Of a stretch of 64,000 bases of DNA, positions 47 through 46,805 are shown one piece after another; the first letter of the stretch is position 1, and every line of letters begins with the position of its first letter. The notes under the pieces were generated by a model, which saw only the letters and a program-made list of their open reading frames with translations, had not been told where the DNA came from and ran no database searches. The position numbers and the translations under genes were made by a program. The stretch is from the NCBI GenBank assembly GCA_001179505.1, contig CDMY01000220.1, positions 98,667 to 162,666 on the forward strand, given 5' to 3'. The stretch comes from Vitrella brassicaformis CCMP3155 (taxonomy: Eukaryota > Protista > Chromerida).

Positions 47-1906
47 ATGACTGCTAGCGGCCACGTGTGGCTGCTGCACACTCTCCTGCTGGGTGTGTCG
101 CGTGGGCTGGAGCTGCCCCGCTTCCCTGATGGCTCGCCATGGTTGGTTCAAGCCGTTGCCCCTCGTCAACCCCGCCCCCGTTTCTCTCCTTGATGTATTT
201 TCGACAGGAATGAGGACGTGACCAATGCAGCTGTGCACCCTGACAGCGCCAAAATCATCAGCTGGCTGTCAAGCGCAGGCGGCTGGGGGAACAACAACCT
301 CTTCCAAATCGGTCGATTGCAGCACATACGTCAAAGCGAATGTCGATTGCAGCAGTCACTATGTGTTCTGACCGACTTGCGTTCCGTTGGTGCAGATTGG
401 TCGATGACGTTGCTACAAGTGGGCTGCAACGATGTCACGGAAGTACCATTTGTGCCCAAGAAAGACTACTACGAGGAAGCATGCGACAATGTCGACGGAG
501 TGCCGCTGCCCGCTGACGGCTCAGGGGCGCTAGAGAGCGGCGAACGCACATGGAAGGAAGGCTGCAGTGGCGACTGCCATCTGCTGGTGTGCACACGTGT
601 GTCATACAGCGACGGGCGCAATGCATGGAAGAGGGAATGAAAAATCAGACACGCCTGTGTGTGTGTGTGTGTGTGTGTGTCTAGGTGCATGACACTTCGA
701 GGGATCTGCTGTACGAGAGCTGGGACACCGACGTGACGCTAGATGCATCCAAGAAAGTCACACAAGGTGAGAGAGACAGGCACATCGATACCATGCGCCC
801 AGCAATGTAACGTCTGTGTCTCTTCCCTCCCTCCCTCCCTCCCTCCCTCCCTCGTGTGTGGCAAGTAAGTGACCAGCACGTGTCTAGTGGTGTGGAATGT
901 GTCGCATCTCTATCCGCCCGACGGCCGTGGGGACGGATGCACCTCAGCCGACGCTGCGGGATTTCCCATCGCTCCACTGCTGTTCACTGCCGACGAGATC
1001 GAGAACGGTTCTATCGACCACGCCATCCGATTCATCCTGCCCAACAACAGAATGCGCGCTGGTGTGATGTCCTCTGACTGACCGACACACACGCATGGGT
1101 AGTTGGGGCGATGTATATGTGCACACAGGTACCTACATGCATCCAGCGAGCCACTATGGCGGCCCCCAGGCCACTGATGAGGACTCGGTCGTCTACGGCA
1201 GCAGATTTCGCCTCAAGGCCGAGTACGACATCAGCGGCTACAAGCAGGGCGCACAGGTGGTCCTCCGAGCACTCAAGAAGGTGGGTCTCACACCAATCAA
1301 CAGACATCGATGACAGAAGGATGGCTGGACATGCGTGTCTCTCTGCGTGTGTGTGCAGTATGGCATGCTGTTGTCTGACGGGGGGAATATTGCTCTCACT
1401 GCTCTCAATGATGACTACTCGGGCTACCAGGGCGCCAAGTACGCTGCTTCTGGCTTCGGCACACGAGACCTCCATGGCTTGCTGCCAGTGGTGAGTTCAC
1501 ACAGCACATCACACACGGACCCAGCTTGAGATGCGTGCCACGCATGTCACGACATGCTTCAGGACTTTGAGATGCTGGATGGCACACTTAAAGGGCCTTT
1601 CAACAGCCGGCCAGCTTGTGAGCGCAATGACATCCCACTCGACCTGCAGGCCCCGTGCTTACCAGACAATGGCCAGGGGGATGATGGGTCAACGCCCACA
1701 CCCACACCCAATGGAAATGACGGTGAGCAAACGAAAAAGGAAGAAAGACGCTTCTTTTCTCATTGTCTTTTCTGAATGGATTCATCGGTCCAGGCAGCAC
1801 CCAACCGCCGGAAAAGGACAGTAGTAGTGTCTCGTCGCGTGTGGGTAGCGCTGGGTGGGTAGCGACAATCGTCCTGGGATGGTGGGCTCTGCACTGCCTT
1901 CATTAG
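47..1906 (+). CDS. Secreted, probably GPI-anchored protein of an uncharacterised, mostly bacterial family (multi-exon)
   Basis: ATG at 47 with signal peptide MTASGHVWLLHTLLLGVSRG. GT-AG introns (142-207, 312-395 and others) join FPDGSPWNEDV...GGWGNNNLFQIDWS...GDCHLLV...CTSADAAGFPIAPLLFTADE...IDHAIRFILPN...YGSRFRLKA...ALKKYGMLLSDGGNIALT. The last exon ends in a Ser-rich then hydrophobic tail (SSSVSSRVGSAGWVATIVLGWWALHCLH*). Motifs recalled from myxobacterial/xanthomonad hypothetical lipoproteins; no search was run. Confidence 0.8.
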
Positions 1907-2185
1907 TTAGCTCCTGCAAATGGACGGTTCCCGGGTAGGGGAGGGGGGATTTATTTCTACATAGGGAGGTGGAACAACCTGAGACACTATTCACCCATGC
2001 TAGCCCACGACGCAGCAATCGACGCACGACAAACGCCATGCAGCTTGCCACCCCATAGATCCCGAGGAGGACTCTCGACCGAGGAAAGGGGAGGAGACAG
2101 ACTCGGAGACGCCGGGAAACCATGGTGGGGGCGCCCCGGGCCCGATCAAGAGCACGGGAATCAGACTCTGCTTCATCCTTTGACA

Positions 2186-3859
2186 ATGCCAGCCATTCCT
2201 TTTTCCCCTGCAGTGGCCCTGTTGGTTTCGACGGCCTCGTTGCTTTGCCTTTGCAATGGCAGCTTCGAGTTGAAGGATCATCGGGGTAAGGCACGTGGGC
2301 CAAAATACGGCGTTCCTTCTTCCAGGATCAATGAGTGATGCCTGCCTGCCTACAGGGCAAAATGACACGTGTCCCGTGATGTGGAGGTGAGGTAGCTGCG
2401 GCCGATCTAGTCGGGGCTACGCACTTTAATGGAAGGGCCTTCACTGCCTGTGTGTCTGTGTGAGGTATCTGGACTGCCCCATGAGGACTGCGAAATCATG
2501 TGGAGCCAAGGAATCCAAAATAACGCTTACTAAGTACGCATCCATGCAGACAGATGCGCTCATTGAAGGGAATCCGGTTTGCGTCTTGCAGGGACGGTGA
2601 AGAGAGGAGCATTCCTGAGTACAACTCCGAGCTCTGCCGATGCGGAACGAGCCGAAAGACAGGGCAGTACGGATGCCACGTAAGCAGCTGGCACTTGCAC
2701 AGGCCTCTATCTGTATATTCTTGTGTGTTCGCTGCGCAGCTGGAGAGCGACCTGACGTCCGCCTCTCCGCCTTCGCACGATACCTGCCCCTTCATGGATC
2801 ACGTGAACACATGCGCTGCTGGTGAGGTTGGCTGAGACACACACGCTGTGCAAAACATAGCTTTGCGCTGATGCATGTGTCCACACGGGCGTGGCGCTCA
2901 GATTCGAGCAGGAAAGCCCTCTGCGGCGCGGACCGATCTTACACGAAGGCCGGGTGAGTTCTTTGTGCCTGTCTCCAGGGAGACACGTGGATATCATGGT
3001 TTCATGTCTCTCTGACGTATGCAGCAAGGAGCTGCCCGACCACCTGTCCGGCGACCCGTGTCACTGCGGCACACACAAAGAAACTGGCGAGTACGGCTGC
3101 CATGTCAAGAATGATCTCGCCACACCAAGCCCCTGTGAGATGACCATCCCTGGCGAGTGCTCTTCCTCTGATACGCCTTGTAAAGACATCAAGGGAGAAG
3201 TGCCAGATGGTACGGGTGGATGAATGGATGGCTGCAAACGTGGATTCGCTCATGCGTGAATGTGGCTGTCTACGAATGCAGAGACGGTCGAGGTCGAGTG
3301 CGTGTGCGGCCGATACCCCCCTGTCTACGGCACTGTTGGATGCTGGGTGGGTGAATGGGTTGGTGGGTGCAGGAAGGGGGTCCGCATTCATCGTATGCAT
3401 GTGCACGCGGATGTATGTGCGTCGTGTGCGCAGCCCAAGACGTGGGTGAACAAGAGCTTTGCCCCGGGCGCTCGCAAATGGAGGCCCGTCAAGTTCCCTC
3501 GTATACGCAGTCACACACACACGCAAAGGATCGATAACACTGTGCTTTGTGTGCACATGTTGTGCTGGATGTGCTTGCAGACAGCCAAGGACGTCCTCTG
3601 GTGTCACCTCCTTGACTGTCCTTCCTGGACAGCAACGACAACCACAGTATGTACGTCCGTGAACATATCAATGATGCATTCGTTTGGGTATGTAAGTGTG
3701 CTACATGTGTGTGTATATTGCTGCAGACCCATTCGATCGGACAAGAAAGAGTGCGGACCTTTAGACAGACCCACGGGCCCGCCCAGAATGTCTTCGTTGT
3801 TTTTGCTCACATACGCCGTATATGAATGTGTGAGAGACACAAAGGAACACACCAGCTGA
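2186..3859 (+). CDS. Secreted Cys-rich protein with three internal repeats (multi-exon; 3' end uncertain)
   Basis: Signal peptide MPAIPFSPAVALLVSTASLLCLCNG. Spliced exons give repeated CRCGTSRKTGQYGCH / CHCGTHKETGEYGCH / CVCGRYPPVYGTVGCW. Final exons were not firmly resolved. Confidence 0.6.
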
Positions 3860-8692: not shown

Positions 8693-10042
8693 CTACGGTG
8701 CCATGAGCCCCTCCATCGCTTTTTGGATGGCCTCGATCGGACCGTGCGATGCCTCCTGCTCGCCACTGGGACCGCCCTCAAGACGACCGACGCGCCCGAG
8801 CACACTCTCCATCGTCTTCATGAGGTCCTGGATGACCCCCATCTGCGTGTAGACCAGCTGCGTCAGGTCGATGGTCGCGATCTCCCCGGCCTCAGTCTCC
8901 GCCCCGAGCGCACCGGCTTCCAACGAGCTAACGGCCCGTGGGAAGAGCTCCTGGACCTCAGCGGCAACCAGGCCGAGGGTGTCGCCGTCGGTGCGCACAT
9001 TGAGCTGCCGGAAAGCCGCATAGGCCGCCGACCGGTTGTGATCGTCCCACTCGGCAATGGATGCAGAGGGCTGTTCGCTGTCGAGGCTGTGGACCTCTAA
9101 GGCACCAGCAGACACGCGCCTGCGTACATCCAAACCGTTGCACCAGCATTTAAGTTGAGCACGGAAGGAATAACCGTCAAAATTCGAACCAATATTCTCA
9201 TTGCCAAGCCCTATGCCTGCATGGTCGAACAAAGCACCAACGAAACAGACCGGGATGTGGAGTGACCTAGCCAGCTACATGACAGCCTTAGGGCTTACGA
9301 GTCGCACGCATGTCACCCGCCTCCGTTTGACCCAACCGCATGCCCACTTCTTCGCCAGGGACGCCAAGCGCGAGGCCTGCATGGTCGAACAAAACAACAG
9401 ACCGGGATGTGGAGCTCGAGTGAGCTAGCCAGCTATGTGACAACCTTAGGGCTTACGATTGGCTGTCACTCCATCACTGATGACGGCACTTGGGGCTCTC
9501 ACACTATTTTGTGCATGGACTTCACCGACGCCCACCACAGTAAGATTCACATTGCCTGCGATGACGGCCCAATCGGCTTTCACATTGTTGTCCGCAACCT
9601 GCATCCATCCATCCATACGTGCAGCGCAACACACACAGATGTACGCAGTGGTGGGGGTGGTTGGGTGCCCATTCACCCACCACATCGCCATTTGCCACAC
9701 TCCAATCAGGGTCTTTAGCAATGATTTCTAATCGACACACACAGACGAAACAGATGTGGATAGAGGTTGGCTGGCTGTAGATGGCTGCTGCTTCTTACTG
9801 TCACAGCTGTTCCGATTCTCAGGGTTGCAGGCGGCGCATCCGTACGGGACGGATCCGAGGGCGAGGCAGCGGCAAGGAGGAAAGAAAGACGAAGGGAGGC
9901 TGACGACATGGTGCGTGACTTCGAAATGGAGGAGGGCAGCAGGAGATACCAGCGGTAACGGACCCGTTACGGTCTGCCCTATGATAGGGCAAGAATTGAA
10001 ACCGATCTCTGAGCTCGCATGGACAAATCGGTCAAAAGGCAG
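8693..10042 (-). CDS. Beta-helix-like repeat protein with C-terminal Peptidase S74 / intramolecular chaperone-like domain (start uncertain; may be fused to the TTLL gene)
   Basis: Spliced translation VADNNVKADWAVIAGNVNL...ANRLALG...ATRIGLG...AFRQLNVRTDGDTLGLVAAEVQELFPRAV...IATIDLTQLVYTQMGVIQDLMKTMESVLGRVGRLE resembles the S74 consensus (G-x-IAQEV-x-x-x-FP-x-x-V ... terminal coiled coil). Confidence 0.65.
9217..9456 (-). repeat. Two near-identical introns (9377-9456, 80 nt; 9217-9298, 82 nt) separated by a 78-nt exon
   Basis: Both read gtaagccctaagg-(c/t)tgtca-..-tagctggctag...ctccacatcccggtctgtt...tttgttcgaccatgcag on the minus strand. Both are phase 1 inside an Arg codon. Confidence 0.9.
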
Positions 10043-10108
10043 CTGACGAATTATTCACCTATCCACTGAGTCATTCACGCACTCGTTCCCCATCCGTCCA
10101 TGTATCAG

Positions 10109-13100
10109 TCAGCGATTGTTGGTTGCGTCCCTTGCAGCCTCGATGGCTTCCCACAGCACCCCAACCATCCACCTCAGCCTGCCCTCCCGGGTCTGCCCCT
10201 CCTCCCTGTACACACGACCCTCCTCTATACACACCTCCTCACACACACCTTCTCCTGACGCACCAACACCAACGGCACACTCAACCGCATGCCGTCTCAC
10301 TCGCCGCTTGCTGCCCTTCCGTCTTCCGATTGTGCACATTGACCCATAGCCGTCATGCAGGCGACTCGGCGACCGGCCCTCCAGCGATGCCGACCGGCCC
10401 TCGCGCCGGGCGCCTGTGGATGTGTGTTGTGAGAGGGGGGAGGGGGGTGGTGGGGGGTGGGGCAGGCTGCTGACCTTGCCGAGGCTGGGGGACCGCACGG
10501 GCGACGTGCGGGACGGCGAACGGGTGTAGGGGAAGAAATCTGGTGGGCTGCGAGACCCCGGCTGGACCGGCGGAGACGGGCAGCGCACGCACCGGTCGGC
10601 CAGGTCATCCTGCATTGGATCGACGAATCCACACACAAGGAACACACTGGTCAGTCAAGGACACTGGTCGGCTGTGTTCCCAGACTGACTGACCAGTAGG
10701 TCCCAGAATCGCCATAGCGGGACTCCCCTGCCCTTGATGGGCATGGTGACCTCCGGCTGCGGGTGCGTTGCCGCCTCGTCCGTGTGGCGGTACCACAGCC
10801 CCTCCAGCTCATACCCCAGCCAACCTCTCTCCTCTAATCGACCCACGCGACACAGCCGGCGCCAGGCAGACCACGACAGCACGTCGGCGGGGGGCGGGGC
10901 CGCCCACATGAACAGCTGGCGGGCCTTGTCCAGCAGCAAGAGGGAGTCGAACATGGGGTCCGGCAGCAGCTGCTGCCACACGCCGTCGCTCATGTCCCGC
11001 TGAAGGGGGTCGAGTGCGGCCTGCGATGACGCGCCGCTGCTGCACGATGCTGCTGCTGCTGCTGCCGCTGTGTCCTTGCGCTTCTTCCGCTTGGCCCCTG
11101 TGGTGGGCGGCATGCTCTTGCCCCTGCTGACATCAATGACGGGCAGCGGCACCGTGGGCAGGTCACCGAAGGCACCCGATCCCGCTCGCCCGGCTGGTGG
11201 CTGTGGCTGAGAGTCCCGTCTGATTGCTGTAGGGTCGGGGTCGGCCCGCAGCCGCAGCACCGCATGTGGGGGGTTGCGCCGTCGCCTTGGTGGTTGCGTG
11301 GTGTGAGCGATGGACCTGGGCGAGACTGAGGAAGTGCCGCCCCCGAGGTGCGTGCTGGCGGTGGGTGAGGCCGAGGGGTCGCGGGAGAGGGGCGCAGCGA
11401 AGGTGGAAGTGGGCGAGGACTCTCCGTCTGTCTGGTCGGTGGTGCTGAGAGTGTCGCCGCGGGGGAGGGGGAGGGCGAGAGGGGGGGCGGGGGGCGTGGC
11501 AGCTGGGTCGCTGTCGTCATCCTGACGATCACGTTTGCCTGGGCTGTTTGGCAAGTCCATCAGGTCGGTGCAGGACCGCCGCCTGCGTGGGATTCATGCG
11601 GATGGACAGAAGCATGGGGGTGGGGGGGTTGCGGGGTGAATGTGGGGGGGTAAGTGGGTCGGTGGCTCACTTGACGGTCCGTTTGCCGCCCAAAAGCTGG
11701 TAGGAGAGCCTCAGTGCCTCGGTGACGAGGGGCTCCTTCACATAACGATCCAGCGCACTGCACGGACAGAGTGGAGGGGCATAGAAACAAACACGTGGTC
11801 TGTGTGTGTGTATGCGCCCACAGCCACCCCACCTGTCGACAGCCATGGTGTTGCCGTCTCCATCTCGCTTCTGGAAGTCGATGCGCAGCGATGGGTTCGA
11901 GTTGACCTCCAGCAGCCACGGCCGGCCGCCCTCGTCCATCAAGATGTCAATACCCAACACCTACGCCCACACACACACACACAGAACACACACAGCCCTG
12001 TAGACGTTCCATCGGCCTATATAGTGCATATACGCACCTGGAAGCACCTCCACGGCACATTGGCGTGTGACGAGCAGCCCCTTGTGTCGGTGCGGTGTGG
12101 CTCTATCAGCCTGGCGAATGTGGCGCCCGATGAGTGGGCGGCCAGCTGGGTGCTGGACTGCACACACGCCAGCTTGTGCGCTAGCAGCGGCTGCAGGCAT
12201 ATCAGCGTCTGTGCGTGGGGGTGGGGCGAAGGCACAAACAACAGGCGTCATCGGGAGGTGTTTCGCTTGGGTGCGCCCGTGTGTGTGTGTGGTGTGTGTG
12301 ACCTTTGCGGCGATGAGTTTGATCTCATGCCATAGGCGACGGACGTCCACACCCACTCCTGCACACCAGCGCGCACGAACATGGAGATGGCAGACGAGTT
12401 GACACACCGTATGGCGACGCCGCTCACCGTGTAGCTGTTTGAGCACGTCCTCGAGGAGCCGCTTGCTGCTGCTCGAATCGTGCAGGTCTGACACATTCAT
12501 GGTGGACAGGACAGGTGTGTGCATTTGTGTTGTGTATATGTCTATAGACCCACCAACACACTCACCACCCACCTGATGCATCTGGAAGGACGAAGGCGGC
12601 GTCATTGTCCTTGTTCAGGTTGAAGTTGGCTGCATCAACAACAAACAGCACGGTGCGGTGAGCTGCGCAATGCGGTGGGTGTGGTGTACATGTGTGTGTG
12701 TGTGTGTGAGTGTGGCTGACTGACTGAAGTGCATGTAGACAGAGCTGAAGTTCTTGCGCGTCGGCCGCTGGTAATCCTCCGTGCAAAACCTGCATATACG
12801 GCACACACCATTGCACACACCATGGACACACGAGTGCACTGCACCTGTCCGTGTGTCGTGTGTGTACCTTACCTTGCCAGGCCGTGTCTGGCGATGTACG
12901 CCCTGGGTGTGGGCAGCAGGCCGGTCACCAACACGAAGATGCGGAAGTCAAACTTGCGACTGAACAGCAACACAAGAGAGGGAGGGAGGGAAGGGCAATA
13001 AGCTACTAGTATATGTGTGTGTGTTTGTGTGCATGTACGCCACGGCTATCTGTCCCGCCCACTGACTGACTGACTTGTTGAGCAGGTAAGGGTCCTCCAG

Positions 13101-14657
13101 GTACCGCTGCACGATGTAGTGACCTGCACACACACAGCCGACCGCCCAGCGATGGATGGATGCAGTGATGACATGACATGCAACCCACACGAGCCGAGCC
13201 ACGGTGCTGGCAGTGTGCCTTCCTTCTGCCTACCTGATCCCGAGAGTATCGACGTGCCCAGGTCACTCGGCCTTTGATTTGATGCCATGGATGGATGGAC
13301 CACACACTTCAGTGCATGCAGCAAGACGTGTCCAGGTTGGGTTGTTCACCTGTTGATGAGTTTGAGTCCCTGCCCCTGGAAGCCCCCGTCAGGCTTGATG
13401 ATGAACGTCTGACGCCGCTCCGACGAACGCAGGCCGTCCAACACATCCTCTGCATGATGCATGTCCAAAACACACACATACATAGCGAGATCCCCGTCCT
13501 TGTGTGTGCGATGGACGCAAGGGACCTTTTTCCTCCGGCAGTATCCACGTCTGTGGGAGGAAGTCAAAGGCATCGGGGAAGTACTGAGCCTGCAGACGCA
13601 TCATCGCCGCCAAACACCTACCATCCATCCATCAACGAGGCACACGCATTCCAACACACTCACTCACGCACAAGTTGGCACGTGCGTGTGTGGTGTGTGT
13701 GCGTGTGTGGTGTATGCGCACCGTTTGCGTACGATCTCCTGCAGCCCTGGGAAGCGGTTGACGAGCACGGGCGGCTTGGTGGAGCTGCTGGCCAGGCTGC
13801 TGCTCCAATAGGGACTAAACATCGACGACGCGTCACGACCGAAGCGACGATATTCTACACCACATGCAGAGACCAGCATTAATGCATCCGATGGTGAGTG
13901 GGTGGCATATATATATATATATATATGTTGATGGCTCACTCACTGACTCACTCACCCTGGTCTCCCACAGCGAGGCCTAGCCAGAAGACGTCCCCCACGT
14001 TGTGCTGCAGAGTCTCCAGACCCCAACCCAACGTTGACGTGCACAACGACAGCAACTCATACTGAGGACAAACAGACACAAGAAAGAACACACAGCCGAG
14101 TTCTGCTCATCATCAATCATTGCTCTTCGTCCCTGTCTTGCCAGGCTTGTCTTGCCCACCTCAGTCCGGGCATGCCTCGTATTCAACGTGACGCTCACTC
14201 GACGCCTCCCACCCCTTCCCCTCCCTCCCCCTCTGCCGCCCGCATTCGTCGACCTCCCTGCCGCATTGCGATTGCCGCCCTCCTGCTCATCATATCGACC
14301 AGCATGGCGAGTCCTCCCAGGCCGTCCGCCCCCGTTGTCTGCCGGCAGTGCAGGTGCGGCGAGGCCAAGGGTGCTCTGCAGGCCCTGCCAGAGCTGCAGC
14401 GGGTCCGGGCTGCACACCCGATGAATGTCCTGGGAAGGCGGCCCCAGGGGCGGCAACACCAGGCCGCTTGGCTGCGATGCTGGAGGGCCTCCTGGCCGCC
14501 GGGGAGCCTGAACGGCCAAACGGGAAGACACAGAAGCACTCACTCACTGCAAATACATACGTGTTTGGTGTTTGTGCTGGTGTTTGCTTCTCTTTGTAGG
14601 CACCTTTTTGACAACTGGTCTTCGTAGTTGAGTCGTCCCGTCCCTGGGCTCCTGCAT
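10109..14657 (-). CDS. Tubulin-tyrosine-ligase-like polyglutamylase, TTLL11-like (multi-exon; 3' end uncertain)
   Basis: VNRFPGL, FDFLPQTWILP, FIIKPDGGFQGQG, YIVQRYLEDPYLL, KFDFRIFVLV, ARFCTEDY, YMHLTNFNLNK, CFQVLGIDILMD...PWLLEVNSNPSL. The exon ending TVK splices (gtgag...cacgcag) into ORF 10655-11560, whose helical region resembles the TTLL11 C-terminus. Start MQEPRDG at 14657. Confidence 0.85.
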
Positions 14658-14678
14658 TCCCTCTTTCCTCTCTTCGTC

Positions 14679-14694
14679 GCGAGCTTAAGCTCGC
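14679..14694. promoter_or_regulatory. Perfect 16-bp palindrome GCGAGCTTAAGCTCGC in the TTLL/EamA divergent intergenic region
   Basis: The palindrome is seen directly and a near-identical one recurs at 37317. Regulatory role is inferred. Confidence 0.5.
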
Positions 14695-14834
14695 AGGGCA
14701 GACCAGCTCGCAAGTGAACGATTTCGAAAACGCGGAGCTCTGACCTGCGCGTGCCTCACAAGGACAAGGACAGCGCTGATAGTGGTGGATCCATCCATTG
14801 AGTCATTGAGTGATCGATTCCAGCTAGCGTCGTC

Positions 14835-15682
14835 ATGTGGCGGCACGTCGACCCCAGATCCCTGGCATGGAGTTTCTTCGCCATGCTGTTCCTGGGCTTC
14901 TCGTACTTCATGCTCGGACTCACCAACGTGGCCGACGAGCTGGACATTGAGCACCTATTCACCATATCGCTCGTGTGGATGTGGACAGGTGAGGCAGAGG
15001 GGAGGGGAGGGGAGGGGAGAGCAGCCAATACTGCCACACCACACCGGGGTGACACAGCAAGTCAAAGCATTAATCCATCCATCTCTTCTGTGTGTCTGGT
15101 GTCTGGGTTGACCGCAGGCATCGTCGGCCTGCTGGCGGCCTTGTACTTCTGGATGACAGTGGGCACCATGTGGATAGCCAGCAGAGGTCTGGAGATCAAG
15201 TTCCCGCCCTCGGACGGGTCCCCCCAGCACGCACCCACAGACATCATCGTCGCCCCTCCCCCCTTCCAGCAACACGCATCCGTCAGCGCCTCTCCCGTCC
15301 CCCCCATCCACCACGCAGACACCATCGGCGGCACCATCGACGAAGAGAACGACCGCTACCTGCCCCAGCCGCCAGGCAACGGCTACGTCCCCTTATCAGG
15401 GGAGCCTCCCCCGTCACCGCCTCCCTCCATCGCGAGTGTGAGTGCATCTGTGAGCGGCTCCCGTGCAGGCGCTGACGAGAGGGAGGGGATGTCGGGCGGT
15501 GCCGGGTCGTCGACGCGTCCGCTGGCGCCGCCGCCTGACCTGAGCATGACTGGTGCGACGCCGACGCTGCAGGTGGCCTATCGGAGGAGAGGGCGGCTCA
15601 GACGGACATGCCGCAAGATCATGATCATTATCATGACGGGATTGGGAGGTGAGGGAGGGAGGGAGACGCAGACCAAGAGCTG

Positions 15683-15717
<35 letters not shown>

Positions 15718-17810
15718 GAGGAGCATTCGTCTGCTGTGCTGTGCTGTGCTGCGTGCAGGTGTGTTTTTGGGTTTTGCCCAGCTGTCGCTCAAGCTGGGGT
15801 TCGAGAAAGACCCGCCAGCCATGGGGCCGTTCAGCGCCGTAAGCAAAGCACCGAGCAACACGCGCCCCGTCCATCCATCCATCCATCCATCCATGTGTGT
15901 GTGTGTTCCATTCCTTCCTCACTCAGATAACGTCAGCGGATGTGGTGTTCGTGACGTGTTTCTTCCACTGCACGATTGGCGACCGGCTGACCAGGATAGA
16001 CCTGCCCGCCTTTGTGGCCGTCCTGGCGGGGCTCTGCACCATGGCCTTGGCTGACCCGAGACCCGAGCACCTGTATGGGCTGGCGTGGAGCTCCCTGGCG
16101 GCCCTGGGCATGGCCGTCAGCGTCATACTCATCCGATGGGGGGCCATGAACGGGGTATCGGCTTACTCGGGTGAGTCAGTCAATGGATGGGGCCTGGCCA
16201 GATTCAGATTCATTCATTGTCTGCGTGCGTGTGCACAGGGTTTGTGATCCGCATGTTGTCTGAGGGCATTATGGGCATCTTGACACTCATCGCCGTGGTG
16301 AGCGAGTCAACAAGAGAGAGAATGGACGACGCCACCACCACGCGGACAGTTTTGGTGTGTGTGCATATGCGTTGCTGCAGCTGTCGACAGGTTTCTCGGT
16401 GCCTGGTCATGGGTTTTTCGTGTGGACCCGGCTGGTCATATTTCCCAGCGCATGCGGCATCTTCCAGGCCATCGCCGTCTTCTGCGTCAACAAGGTCACA
16501 CACAAGACAACACACACACACACATATGTATGCATTCGGGCCAATCGCTGTCTGTCTGTCTGTCCAACAGGCCCTGATGTACCCCAAGCCCGGCATATCG
16601 ACAGCACTTGTGGGCGCCAATCCCCTGGTGGTATTCTTCTGCCAGCTGGGAGTGGGGCGTGAGTACCCCCGCACTGTCAACCTGGTCGGCATGCTCCTCG
16701 TGGTCGCGGGGTGCCTCGCACTCACACTATCTAGGTACATCTCTCTCACACACACCGAACAGTCACAATAGACACGACACCATGTTCGTTCTGCCTGTCT
16801 GTCTGTCTGTCTGTCGTCATGGCCCCAGGGCGTTTTCTGCGTCAGCTCGAGCGAGTGCGGGCAGCCCTGAGGGCCCTCACGGAGCCCGGCGGTCATCCAA
16901 TGACGAGAATAACAGTGCCATGCCATCGCTGCACCCCCACCCAGAGTCTGAGAGTGCGCGCGCCCCCCTCTTCCCCTTCAACAAGGCCAACGCGATGCGC
17001 AACCAAGTGGCGCTCGGCTTCGACAGCACTGGGCCGCATATGGACGACAGCCAGCGTGTGATTGCGGTGGGTCACGCGCAGAGCATTGCGTGGAGCAGCC
17101 GGGCGGGAAGTATCGACACGGTCACCACGATTGGGTATGGAAATCCTGCGGTGATGAATCCTCCTTCACATAGGTTGGTTAATGAGCAGCCAGGCAGACA
17201 GACGGGGGGCGGGTGGTGGCACCATGCATGGGGGAGGGACAAGGCAAGGCGACTGGCGTTTCGGCCCGACACGCTGCCCAGCATCATCAGCACGTCAGAG
17301 AGGCCCACTGCCAGCCAGGCCAGCGAGTCAGTGCGTGGCGACGGGGGGGACGACTCGACGACCCGACCTTTTGGCTCGCCTTGTCCGTGCCCCTTCCCCC
17401 CGTCTGCTGCCCTCGCCCCCCCTCCAAATTCCGATGATCACTCTTACATGTACTGGCATTTGTCGCCCTACCCCAGGCAGGCAGCGCAGATCAGAGAGGG
17501 GAGGAGCAGCAGCAAGGGGTGGCGGAGGTGGATAGGCAGGATGTTCAGCTGGCCGCCGTCGCACGAGGGAGAGGGGGAGGGGGAGGGCGAAAGCGGCACT
17601 GACGATGACGGGAGCTCGCTTGTGTACGGTGTGGTGTACTCGCTGAGGAGGAGAGGCCAGACAGACGCACTCCCCAGCATGCATGTGCAGACAGACAGGC
17701 AGAGGCAGAGAGGAGTGAGCCTCACGCCCATGTCGACTCAGCAGCTGGGGGGCCGGCTGCCTCTCCTGCACGGCACCATGGCTGAGTCGATCCTACTACC
17801 CTGGCAATGA
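14835..17810 (+). CDS. EamA/DMT-superfamily membrane transporter with a long Pro/Ser-rich insertion and long C-terminal tail
   Basis: About 10 hydrophobic segments over spliced exons, with ITSADVVFVTCFFHCTIGDRL and ISTALVGANPLVVFFCQLGVGREYP...VGMLLVVAG matching paired EamA repeats. Confidence 0.8.
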
Positions 17811-45817: not shown

Positions 45818-46805
45818 ATGGCGTGGAGGTTGGTTGTGGCGGCGGTGTTGGCCTCGTTGGGATGGGTGTGCGGGTCAGCTGGTGGCTCTGCTTTCGTGCC
45901 CTCATGGTCCTTGAGGCAACCCATGCGCTCACTCAGACAGGTACAGTACCAATGGTTCGTTTATTGCACTGATACGACCACGATGGCAGGCAGATCAGGG
46001 AGATCAGCTGCTTGACGGTTTGTTGTGCATCATCTGCTGTGTGCCTGTGTGGCCATCAGTCGCGGCCGGTGCACACCGAGCAGTACCTGTTTGGCGGTGC
46101 CGGCACACCAGCTCCCCCACCAAGTGGGCAACACAGACGAGAGTGTGTCGATGCCTATTGGTTGCTGTGCGTGTCTGTTCCGTCCACTCAGCTCCTGCTG
46201 GCGGTGCGGGCGGCGGCCTCATGCAGAACTTCGAGGCCATCAAGAAGACACAGGAGCTCTTCCAAAAGATGAAGGTCAGCACGGAGCGGAACAACAGACT
46301 CATAGGTCGACAGCTGGCATTCATTGGTGTGTCGTCAGGATTTGAACGAGGAGATGCTCAAGACGGAGATAGAGGGCCGTTCGGACGACGTCGACAAGGA
46401 GGTCAAGATCGTCTACAACGGCAACGGCACACCGCTGCGCGCAGAGGTCAGCGAGGGCGCCGCATCGCTCGACAAAGACCAGCTCGAAGAGGTACGCCAC
46501 CGGACCAAATCACACACACGGATATACACAGGTACTGAATGCCGTGTGTGTGTGTGTGTGTGTGTGTGATTTGGTCAGGCCTTGACAACGGCTCTGAAGG
46601 ACGGTTTTCAGAAGGCCGGAGAGACCAGGCTGCAACGGATAGCCAAGCTATACGAAGGTGCGTATGGGTGGACGGACAGACAGATGAGGCGGGCAGCCTG
46701 TGTGGACGTGTGTATCCTGTCCTGCTGTGTGTGTGTGTGTGTGCAGAGATGGGATTGCCGGCAGAGGCCATGCAGAAGATGATGGGTCAAGGGATGGGCC
46801 TCTAG
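45818..46805 (+). CDS. Plastid-targeted YbaB/EbfC family protein (STIC2-like)
   Basis: Signal peptide MAWRLVVAAVLASLGWVCG, then GSAFVPS transit start. Mature part GGLMQNFEAIKKTQELFQKMKDLNEEMLKTEIEGRS..VKIVYNGNGTPLRAEV..LEEALTTALKD fits YbaB/EbfC. Confidence 0.8.

What the first reader, a model, noticed from the sequence alone, without database searches (positions are those of the whole stretch)
9217..9456. Twin introns far more similar to each other than their flanking exons: possible intron copying (Introner-like) event
Two consecutive introns (80 and 82 nt) share long identical blocks (gtaagccctaagg, tagctggctag, ctccacatcccggtctgtt, tttgttcgaccatgcag). Both interrupt the Arg codon of an A-x-R-[LI]-[AG]-L-G repeat in phase 1. 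The neighbouring exons match for only about 14 nt (gcctcgcgcttggc vs gcatagggcttggc) and then diverge. Both introns also lack the microsatellites typical of other introns here. After simple tandem duplication introns should decay faster than exons, so this suggests recent intron transposition, homing into a similar proto-splice site, or intron-restricted gene conversion.
Basis: partly seen in the sequence, partly recalled or inferred. Interest (0 to 1): 0.75.

Follow-up and report, generated by a model that had tools for sequence, protein, structure and literature searches.

The report
One intron copied next door
In a repeat-protein gene of the alga Vitrella brassicaformis, an old 80-base intron was recently copied once into a look-alike spot 78 bases downstream; this is a clean single case of intron birth by local copying, not a spreading "introner" family.

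Summary
On the minus strand, introns A (9456-9377, 80 nt) and B (9298-9217, 82 nt) are GTAAG...CAG and phase 1 in a CGC codon. They match at 69 of 74 aligned bases. The exons around them are no more alike than shuffled sequence beyond 7 nt upstream and 14 nt downstream.

The window is Vitrella brassicaformis CCMP3155. A transcript-derived protein carries the exon 3-4 junction, and the public gene model splices both introns.

The "Introner-like" reading fails:
- The 72.7 Mb genome holds only these two copies.
- There are no terminal repeats, no target duplication and no stable fold.

Intron-specific copying is supported:
- A sits at the gene family's usual phase-1 position before a module motif.
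- B's position is intron-free in all 13 paralogues, where exon 3 plus the start of exon 4 align to one uninterrupted module of similar length.
- B is therefore a seamless, lineage-specific copy of A.
- B sits at the one exonic site of 818 that best matches A's junction (16/21; next best 12).

I favour DNA-level templated repair between these look-alike junctions. Reverse splicing comes second. The scan's earlier, unchecked notes report other one-off local intron copies elsewhere in this genome.

The parts
9377..9456 (-). Intron A, 80 nt, GTAAG..CAG, phase 1. This is the ancestral intron and the presumed template of the copy.
   Evidence: The same phase-1 position directly before the module motif is occupied by an intron in paralogues L004, L006, L007 and L011.
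9217..9298 (-). Intron B, 82 nt, GTAAG..CAG, phase 1. This is the recent, lineage-specific copy of A.
   Evidence: 69/74 aligned bases identical to A. The splice junction is present in transcript-derived protein P0001. The homologous site is uninterrupted in 13 of 13 paralogues.
9299..9376 (-). Exon 3, 78 nt, symmetric phase 1-1, encoding (R)LALGVPGEEVGMRLGQTEAGDMRAT.
   Evidence: It is not similar to the neighbouring exons. Together with the start of exon 4 it aligns to a single module in the paralogues.
9457..9598 (-). Exon 2, 142 nt, encoding VADNNVKADW...SDGVTAN.
8693..9216 (-). Last exon including the stop codon: the rest of the last module plus the family's conserved C-terminal domain.
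9363..9463 (-). Donor junction: 7 nt of exon (GCCAATC), intron A, then 14 nt of exon (GCCTCGCGCTTGGC).
9203..9305 (-). Target junction: 7 nt of exon (GCGACTC), intron B, then 14 nt of exon (GCATAGGGCTTGGC). Of 818 exonic sites in the gene, this is the best match to the donor junction.
   Evidence: 16/21 against a next best of 12/21. The upstream flank is ancestral: own GGTGACATGCGTGCGACT against L004 GGTGACATCGGCGCGACA.
9681..9727 (-). Small 47-nt exon (K)IIAKDPDWSVANGDV, used in the public model.
9799..9908 (-). First-exon region. It has a signal-peptide-like ATG frame and a Cys-motif frame offset by one base.

Best explanation
Intron B is a recently gained intron made by copying its neighbour, intron A.

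Shown:
- Only two copies exist in the genome.
- The two introns are about 93% identical, while the exons between and around them are unrelated at the DNA level.
- A occupies the family's canonical phase-1 position before the [ILVM]-x-[AVL]-G module motif.
- B's site is intron-free in all 13 other family members. There, exon 3 plus the start of exon 4 correspond to one continuous module of similar length (own 48 codons; 49-50 in L006/L008, 27-44 in L004/L007/L014). The insertion was therefore seamless.
- B lies at the one exonic site that most resembles A's exon junction.

Inferred mechanism: a break or stalled fork at site B was repaired by short-homology templated synthesis (SDSA, microhomology-mediated or gene-conversion-like). 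The template was the look-alike junction 158 nt upstream. Because the flanks are quasi-repeats of the protein's coil motif, the only segment present in the template and absent at the target is the intron. A homology-guided copy is then automatically intron-precise and in the same phase.

My odds:
- Gain by copying A: about 0.75.
- Within that, DNA-level templated repair about 0.55, spliceosomal reverse splicing in cis followed by reverse transcription and recombination about 0.25-0.3, the rest unknown.
For: - Copy number: the whole-genome DNA search and three block searches with up to 2 mismatches find only A and B. No paralogue locus carries the sequence.
- Intron against exon similarity.
- Canonical position: 17 curated phase-1 introns before the module motif in 10 paralogue loci.
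- B site uninterrupted in the paralogues, module length conserved, upstream flank ancestral.
- The family is about 14 loci and all were examined.
- Tree: the own gene lies inside an 8-gene clade that is separate from L010+L011, so loss of B elsewhere would need at least 2 events.
- Look-alike target: 16/21 against a next best of 12 among 818 sites. At least 16/21 occurs twice in 525,252 background positions.
- Splicing.
- Rarity: no other clean twin intron in a 263 kb sample.
Against: - No sister species, other strain or population data were reachable, so gain and loss polarity rests on paralogues and parsimony.
- The tree inside the 8-gene clade is unresolved, and the own gene has a long branch.
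- The homology available to guide a DNA-level copy is short and imperfect (5/7 and 11/14).
- None of the five flank mismatches (-5, -3, +3, +5, +7) was co-converted. A splice-site-defined RNA mechanism would explain that more simply.
- Flank identity of 16/21 is only in the top 12% of pairs of canonical junctions in the family. Part of the target similarity is therefore motif conservation.
- Splicing of A was not confirmed by a transcript that I could read.
Confidence: 0.7

Rival explanations
1. RNA-level intron transposition in cis. The excised intron A was reverse-spliced by the spliceosome into the same transcript at a TC|GC site 78 nt downstream. The RNA was then reverse transcribed, and the cDNA recombined with the gene between A and the 3' end.
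For: The insertion is seamless and in the same orientation. Similarity ends at the splice sites, with mismatches already at -3 and +3. Donor and target share TC|GC, and only 5 such sites exist in the exons. The target lies 3' of the donor. This is the classical model and its indirect evidence is reviewed in PMC3443670.
Against: Reverse splicing has no known need for 21 nt of exon similarity, yet the target is the single best look-alike of 818 sites. The review reports no in vivo demonstration (PMC3443670). The scan's earlier, unchecked notes on this genome describe other one-off local intron copies with co-copied exon letters or target duplications, which points to DNA-level copying.
Confidence: 0.22
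2. Both introns are old, and their sequences were recently homogenised by an intron-limited gene conversion or template switch. No new intron position was created.
For: Both sites carry the family's junction motif. Intron presence at module boundaries varies among paralogues. In one subfamily (L010/L011/L015/L016) intron 5' parts stay similar between modules and genes.
Against: None of the 13 paralogues has an intron at the B-homologous site. This reading needs two events (an earlier gain at B or losses elsewhere, then a conversion) where copying needs one. A 78-nt module exon would be the shortest in the family, where modules are at least 129 nt.
Confidence: 0.13
3. Ordinary tandem duplication of an exon-plus-intron unit of about 158 nt, followed by rapid divergence of the exon copies.
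For: The copies are spaced 152-160 nt apart. The family does grow by module duplication: in L014 two introns are 72% identical and their modules are also homologous.
Against: Exon similarity is at shuffle level while the introns differ by about 7%. No selection regime erases synonymous sites that fast. Exon 3 and the start of exon 4 align to consecutive parts of one paralogue module, not to each other, and total length is conserved.
Confidence: 0.03
4. An Introner or Introner-like mobile element: a self-propagating intron family, either transposon-borne or structured RNA.
For: The sequence is spliced, lies co-linear with transcription and is duplicated.
Against: There are two copies only in 72.7 Mb. 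There are no inverted repeats and no target-site duplication. Fold z-scores are -0.01 and +0.89. There is no Rfam match. The length is ordinary for this family's introns (55-93 nt).
Confidence: 0.02
5. The intron sequence is conserved because it carries a functional element, such as a small RNA or a splicing regulator needed on both sides of exon 3.
For: Long identical blocks (19, 17 and 13 nt). Because both introns are phase 1, skipping exon 3 would stay in frame.
Against: No Rfam hit and no fold signal. The sequence is absent from every paralogue and from the rest of the genome. Constraint cannot create similarity between two unrelated introns; a copying event is needed anyway.
Confidence: 0.03

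Closest known systems
Intron transposition / intron duplication events (Oikopleura dioica, Mycosphaerella/Zymoseptoria), as tabulated in PMC3443670 and PMC3488318
   Same: A new intron is homologous to another intron of the same genome. [quoted passage not shown]
   Different: Here donor and recipient lie 78 nt apart in the same gene. The recipient site is a look-alike of the donor's exon junction. There is one event only, and the RNA intermediate is unproven.
Intron transfer by recombination between paralogues (Chironomus globin type; PMC3443670)
   Same: Homology-guided DNA transfer of an intron into an intron-less homologous site. Precision comes from the flanking homology.
   Different: The 'paralogues' here are two quasi-repeats (coil boundaries) inside one gene, with only 7+14 nt of imperfect flank similarity. 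No paralogous gene has an intron at that site.
[quoted passage not shown]
   Same: A one-off gain, with local origin of the inserted DNA and short homologies at the junctions.
   Different: No flanking short direct repeats or filler DNA are seen. The inserted DNA is an entire pre-existing intron.
Introner elements (Micromonas, Aureococcus, Amoebophrya) and fungal Introner-like elements (PMC7789003; PMC3609843)
   Same: Near-identical introns that are spliced and lie co-linear with the host gene.
   Different: Those families have tens to thousands of dispersed copies, and often direct or inverted repeats or stable hairpins. Here there are two copies and none of these features.
Sister introns and stwintrons of Hypoxylaceae (PMC8469720)
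   Same: Seamless integration. That paper reports genes with a second, newer sister copy 71 or 582 nt from an older one, so second copies near a first are seen there too.
   Different: Those belong to a family of dozens with terminal inverted repeats, and their integration sites show no exon similarity.

Membership tests
Introner / Introner-like elements | Many near-identical copies dispersed in unrelated genes | tested here: not met
   Own-genome DNA search and three 19-nt block searches with up to 2 mismatches find only the two adjacent copies.
Introner / Introner-like elements | Terminal inverted repeats and/or target-site duplication (transposon-type), or a stable predicted hairpin and above-average length (fungal type) | tested here: not met
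   0 inverted repeats. Junctions TC|GT...AG|GC show no duplicated target. Fold z = -0.01 and +0.89. Lengths of 80 and 82 nt lie within the family range of 55-93 nt.
Introner / Introner-like elements | Spliced as a canonical intron, co-linear with transcription | tested here: met
   GT-AG boundaries. The B junction is in transcript-derived P0001, and both junctions are in public model P0002.
Intron transposition (copy of an existing intron at a new position) | The new intron is homologous to another intron of the genome | tested here: met
   69/74 identical, z = 15.
Intron transposition (copy of an existing intron at a new position) | Seamless insertion at a position that was previously intron-less | tested here: met
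   13/13 paralogues are uninterrupted at the homologous site. Module length is 48 codons here against 49-50 in L006/L008 (27-44 in L004/L007/L014). The upstream flank is ancestral. Polarity rests on paralogues, not on orthologues.
Intron transposition (copy of an existing intron at a new position) | RNA intermediate (reverse splicing plus reverse transcription) | not testable with these tools
   No sequence feature separates it from a DNA-level copy. The look-alike target argues mildly against it.
Tandem genomic duplication (AGGT) intron gain | The new intron is made of duplicated exon sequence bounded by duplicated AGGT | tested here: not met
   The intron copies another intron, the exons are not duplicated, and the junctions are TC|GT and AG|GC.
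Intron transfer / gene conversion between homologous sites | Donor and recipient sites are homologous, and the intron is the only heterology transferred | tested here: inconclusive
   The sites are quasi-repeats (16/21; best of 818 sites) and the transfer is intron-precise. However, the homology is very short and no flank mismatch was co-converted.
[quoted passage not shown] | Short direct repeats or filler at the new intron's borders | tested here: not met
   No direct repeat flanks B beyond the TC and GC shared with the donor junction.
Peptidase S74 intramolecular chaperone domain (gene context only) | Match to the Pfam model or to solved S74 structures | tested here: not met
   No Pfam family at E <= 1 for the exon products or for 10 aligned family members, apart from unrelated weak hits. 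The profile found no PDB chain at E <= 1. The AlphaFold model was too poor for a fold search (pLDDT 51.8).

The most novel reading that the evidence does not exclude
Vitrella gains introns repeatedly by short-range copying of existing introns into nearby DNA. In this case a spliceosomal intron 'homed' into a look-alike of its own exon junction. If the process is splice-site-defined (reverse splicing in cis), this would be one of the cleanest natural donor-recipient pairs for spliceosomal intron transposition, with target choice guided by exon context.
Probability: 0.22. Interest if true: 0.7.

Novelty: new member of a known kind. Interest (0 to 1): 0.45.

Why it matters
How new spliceosomal introns arise is still argued mostly from old, eroded cases. 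Here the template and the copy are both intact and differ by only about 7%. They sit 78 nt apart, and 13 intron-less paralogues at the target site give the before state. That makes the event a usable natural example: the insertion was seamless, kept the phase, and landed on the best look-alike of the donor junction in the gene.

It also shows that a repeat protein whose coils share a junction motif offers ready-made landing sites for intron spread within a gene. The scan's earlier, unchecked notes describe other one-off local intron copies in the same genome. If those hold, local copying may be a recurrent, low-rate route of intron gain in chromerids, which are intron-rich relatives of the intron-poor apicomplexans. 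That could be tested by population sequencing.

Tried and rejected
- Introner family: rejected by the copy-number searches and by blastn-short against all paralogue loci.
- Structured or known RNA in the intron: no fold signal and no Rfam hit.
- Tandem exon-plus-intron duplication: rejected by exon statistics and the paralogue alignment.
- Flank co-duplication (a 101-nt segment adding 7 codons): rejected. The Ala codon and the preceding GGTGACAT... of B's upstream flank are shared with paralogues, and module length is conserved.
- Other strains or environmental copies: a protein-guided scan of metagenome contigs found nothing. The 19-mer scan hit only an unrelated bacterial gene.
- Gene identity: Pfam, a PDB profile search and AlphaFold2 gave nothing usable. 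No fold search was run on the low-confidence model.
- All database searches used single exons by reference or the public protein P0002.
- In the scripts, exons 3 and 4 were concatenated in memory to score junction 21-mers. One search also built the exon-intron-exon read-throughs and printed their translations. Nothing joined was saved or sent to a search tool.

Full report
**What is there**

The gene lies on the minus strand.
- Intron A is 9456..9377 (80 nt) and intron B is 9298..9217 (82 nt).
- Both start GTAAGC and end CATGCAG, and both split a CGC Arg codon after its first base.
- Both contain an in-frame TAA if retained.
- Between them lies a 78-nt exon encoding LALGVPGEEVGMRLGQTEAGDMRAT.
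- The two introns share 69 of 74 aligned bases and differ by two indels of 6 and 8 nt. The alignment z-score is 15 against shuffles and the Jukes-Cantor distance is 0.071.
- Exon 3 is no more similar to the 78 nt before A or after B than shuffled sequence (z = 2.1 and 1.7).
- Outside the 7 nt upstream and 14 nt downstream flanks, identity is 22/71 and 9/64.

**Source and splicing**

- The last exon matches a Vitrella brassicaformis MMETSP transcript ORF at 100% (P0001).
- It also matches the public protein CEL94505.1 (P0002), which is encoded on a contig of 162,666 nt.
- The genome handle has 72,700,666 bases in 1064 contigs. These are the published figures for strain CCMP3155 (PMC4501334).
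- P0001 reads ...GDMRAT-R-IGLGNEN..., which proves removal of intron B.
- P0002 removes A and B exactly as predicted. That model was built by Augustus with RNA-seq intron hints.
- I could not read a transcript across the A junction.
- All database searches were done exon by exon by reference.

**Not an introner**

- An 80-nt DNA search of the whole genome returns only A and B.
- Three 19-nt conserved blocks, searched with up to 2 mismatches, return only A and B plus control-level noise.
- No paralogue locus carries the sequence.
- There are no inverted repeats and no duplicated target.
- There is no fold signal (z = -0.01 and +0.89) and no Rfam match.
- In a 263-kb sample (the whole contig plus 100 kb of another), this is the only clean pair of look-alike introns.

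**Family context**

- The gene belongs to a family of about 14 loci.
- The products have a signal-peptide-like start, a Cys motif, modules beginning [ILVM]-x-[AVL]-G-(D/N)-P and containing G-D-[IV]-x-A, and a conserved C-terminal domain (...AEWxxxNRSAAYEAFRQL...TIDLTQLLYTQ...).
- Across 10 paralogue loci, 17 curated introns lie in phase 1 directly before the module motif. This is the family's canonical intron position.
- Intron A sits exactly there. L004, L006, L007 and L011 have a phase-1 intron at the aligned column.

**B is new**

- In a MAFFT alignment, the own sequence from A onward is LALGVPGEEVGMRLGQTEAGDMRAT-R-IGLGNENIGSNFDGYSFRAQLK-CWC.
- This aligns to one uninterrupted module in every paralogue. 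Examples are L008 IVAGSVPTGMALEYGDIIASKDLASGKDVHSHRD...CSC and L006 VQAGDPQEYVVNEGDVVAKRDVQSDDD...CEC.
- The length is similar: 48 codons here against 49-50 in L006 and L008 (27-44 in L004, L007 and L014).
- B falls just after the family's G-D-x-x-A-x motif.
- The codons before B are shared with L004: own GGT GAC ATG CGT GCG ACT against GGT GAC ATC GGC GCG ACA. The upstream flank is therefore ancestral, not imported.
- The three remaining, partly decayed family members are also continuous at this site. That makes 13 of 13 paralogues without intron B.
- The tree separates L010+L011 (support 100/99) from an unresolved 8-gene clade that contains the own gene on a long branch. Loss of B everywhere else would need at least two events plus a later conversion. 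Copying needs one event.

**Target choice**

- The 21 exonic bases around A were scored against all 818 exonic positions of the gene.
- The B site scores 16/21 and the next best scores 12.
- In 525,252 background positions, a score of at least 16 occurs twice.
- Part of this similarity is motif conservation. Pairs of canonical junctions in the family average 11.4 +- 2.7, and 12% reach 16.
- Even so, landing on a coil boundary, at the same codon position and phase, is very unlikely for a random insertion.

**Mechanism (inferred)**

Three facts need explaining:
- The copy is intron-precise.
- The target is a look-alike of the donor junction.
- None of the five flank mismatches was converted. Mismatch density is 5/14 in the +-7 nt flanks against 5/74 in the intron (p = 0.008).

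I first leaned towards reverse splicing because of the sharp borders. That precision, however, comes for free in a homology-guided DNA copy. If the flanks are quasi-repeats, the only heterology to transfer is the intron. The invading end keeps its own bases, and mismatch repair can restore the other flank. A DNA-level process also predicts the look-alike target, which reverse splicing does not.

Earlier notes of this scan are unchecked leads, not evidence. They describe other one-off local intron copies in this genome, some with co-copied exon letters or target duplications. These prompted the re-weighing.

I now put DNA-level short-homology templated repair first, reverse splicing in cis second, and conversion of a pre-existing B intron third. 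The sequence alone cannot settle the question.

**Comparison with known cases**

- The event fits the class of intron duplication or transposition events known from a handful of cases in Oikopleura and Mycosphaerella (PMC3443670).
- Mechanistically it may be an intragenic version of intron transfer.
- It fails the defining tests for introner families.
- In Hypoxylaceae, second sister copies have been seen 71 and 582 nt from an older copy in the same gene (PMC8469720). That is a parallel for short-range spread.

**Verdict**

This is a real, clean, single intron gain by local copying. It is a new member of a known kind and of moderate interest. The interest would rise if the other local copies noted in this genome are confirmed as a recurrent process.

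Noticed in passing
window 9799-9908 (minus strand): The paralogue-like signal peptide (MSSASLRLSFLLAA...) and the paralogue-like Cys motif (...CLALGSVPYGCAACNPENRNSCDK) lie in frames offset by one base, as if one base were missing near GCCGC|TGCCTC. Skipping the 47-nt exon 9727-9681 would restore the frame. The gene may be decaying or the assembly may have an error. The gene also has the longest branch in the family tree.
   Followed up: partly
window about 9800-16000 (minus strand); protein P0002: The public model CEL94505.1 (1154 aa, named tubulin-tyrosine ligase-like 9) fuses this small secreted-type gene to the upstream TTLL gene through a cryptic acceptor before AATCGGAAC. This is probably an annotation artefact.
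   Followed up: partly
window 8693-9216; loci L004-L016: The family comprises about 14 modular repeat proteins with a conserved C-terminal domain. That domain has no Pfam or PDB sequence match, including Peptidase_S74. The AlphaFold2 model is poor (pLDDT 51.8). Its predicted secondary structure, with a long C-terminal helix, neither supports nor excludes the tail-fibre chaperone reading made by other first readers.
   Followed up: partly
L015 665-721, 851-929, 1131-1223; L010 1123-1177; L016 1236-1312; L011 about 2142-2220 (minus): In one subfamily the first 35 nt or so of the module-boundary introns (GTAAGCARCA..GC.GCAGGTCCYGTCG) and the last 35 nt or so of the preceding exon are conserved. 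This holds between modules and between genes on different contigs, while the intron 3' parts are microsatellite-rich and differ.
   Followed up: partly
L014 about 2329-2403 and about 1863-1938 (minus strand): Two non-adjacent introns of one paralogue are 72% identical, and their modules are also recognisably homologous. This is an ordinary old module (exon plus intron) duplication and a useful contrast to the A/B pair.
   Followed up: yes
L005, L012, L014, L015: Several family members carry in-frame stops or frameshifts in the conserved C-terminal region and so may be pseudogenes. L012 shares the own gene's C-terminal tail (...EAMQKMAEGLMAP).
   Followed up: no
L049 287-454 and 3724-3895 (G000:C347:70287-70454 and 73724-73895): A duplicated 61-nt exon (GENKGDMAINWAQDILFKELG) is 100% identical between the two copies, and the intron upstream of it is about 90% identical. 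The copies lie 3.4 kb apart. Here the exon is at least as similar as the intron, the opposite pattern to the A/B pair. This may be mutually exclusive exons or a recent segmental duplication.
   Followed up: no
L033 4599-4997 (G000:C220:14599-14997): A non-coding tandem repeat of two units of about 219 nt, 83% identical.
   Followed up: no
window 46500-46579: An 80-nt imperfect palindrome that matches its own reverse complement at 75%.
   Followed up: no
protein P0001 (MMETSP Transcript_45065): The ORF, labelled 'complete', starts at the Met inside exon 3. If intron A were retained, its in-frame TAA would give exactly this ORF. The older intron A may therefore be retained in that transcript while the new intron B is spliced.
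   Followed up: no
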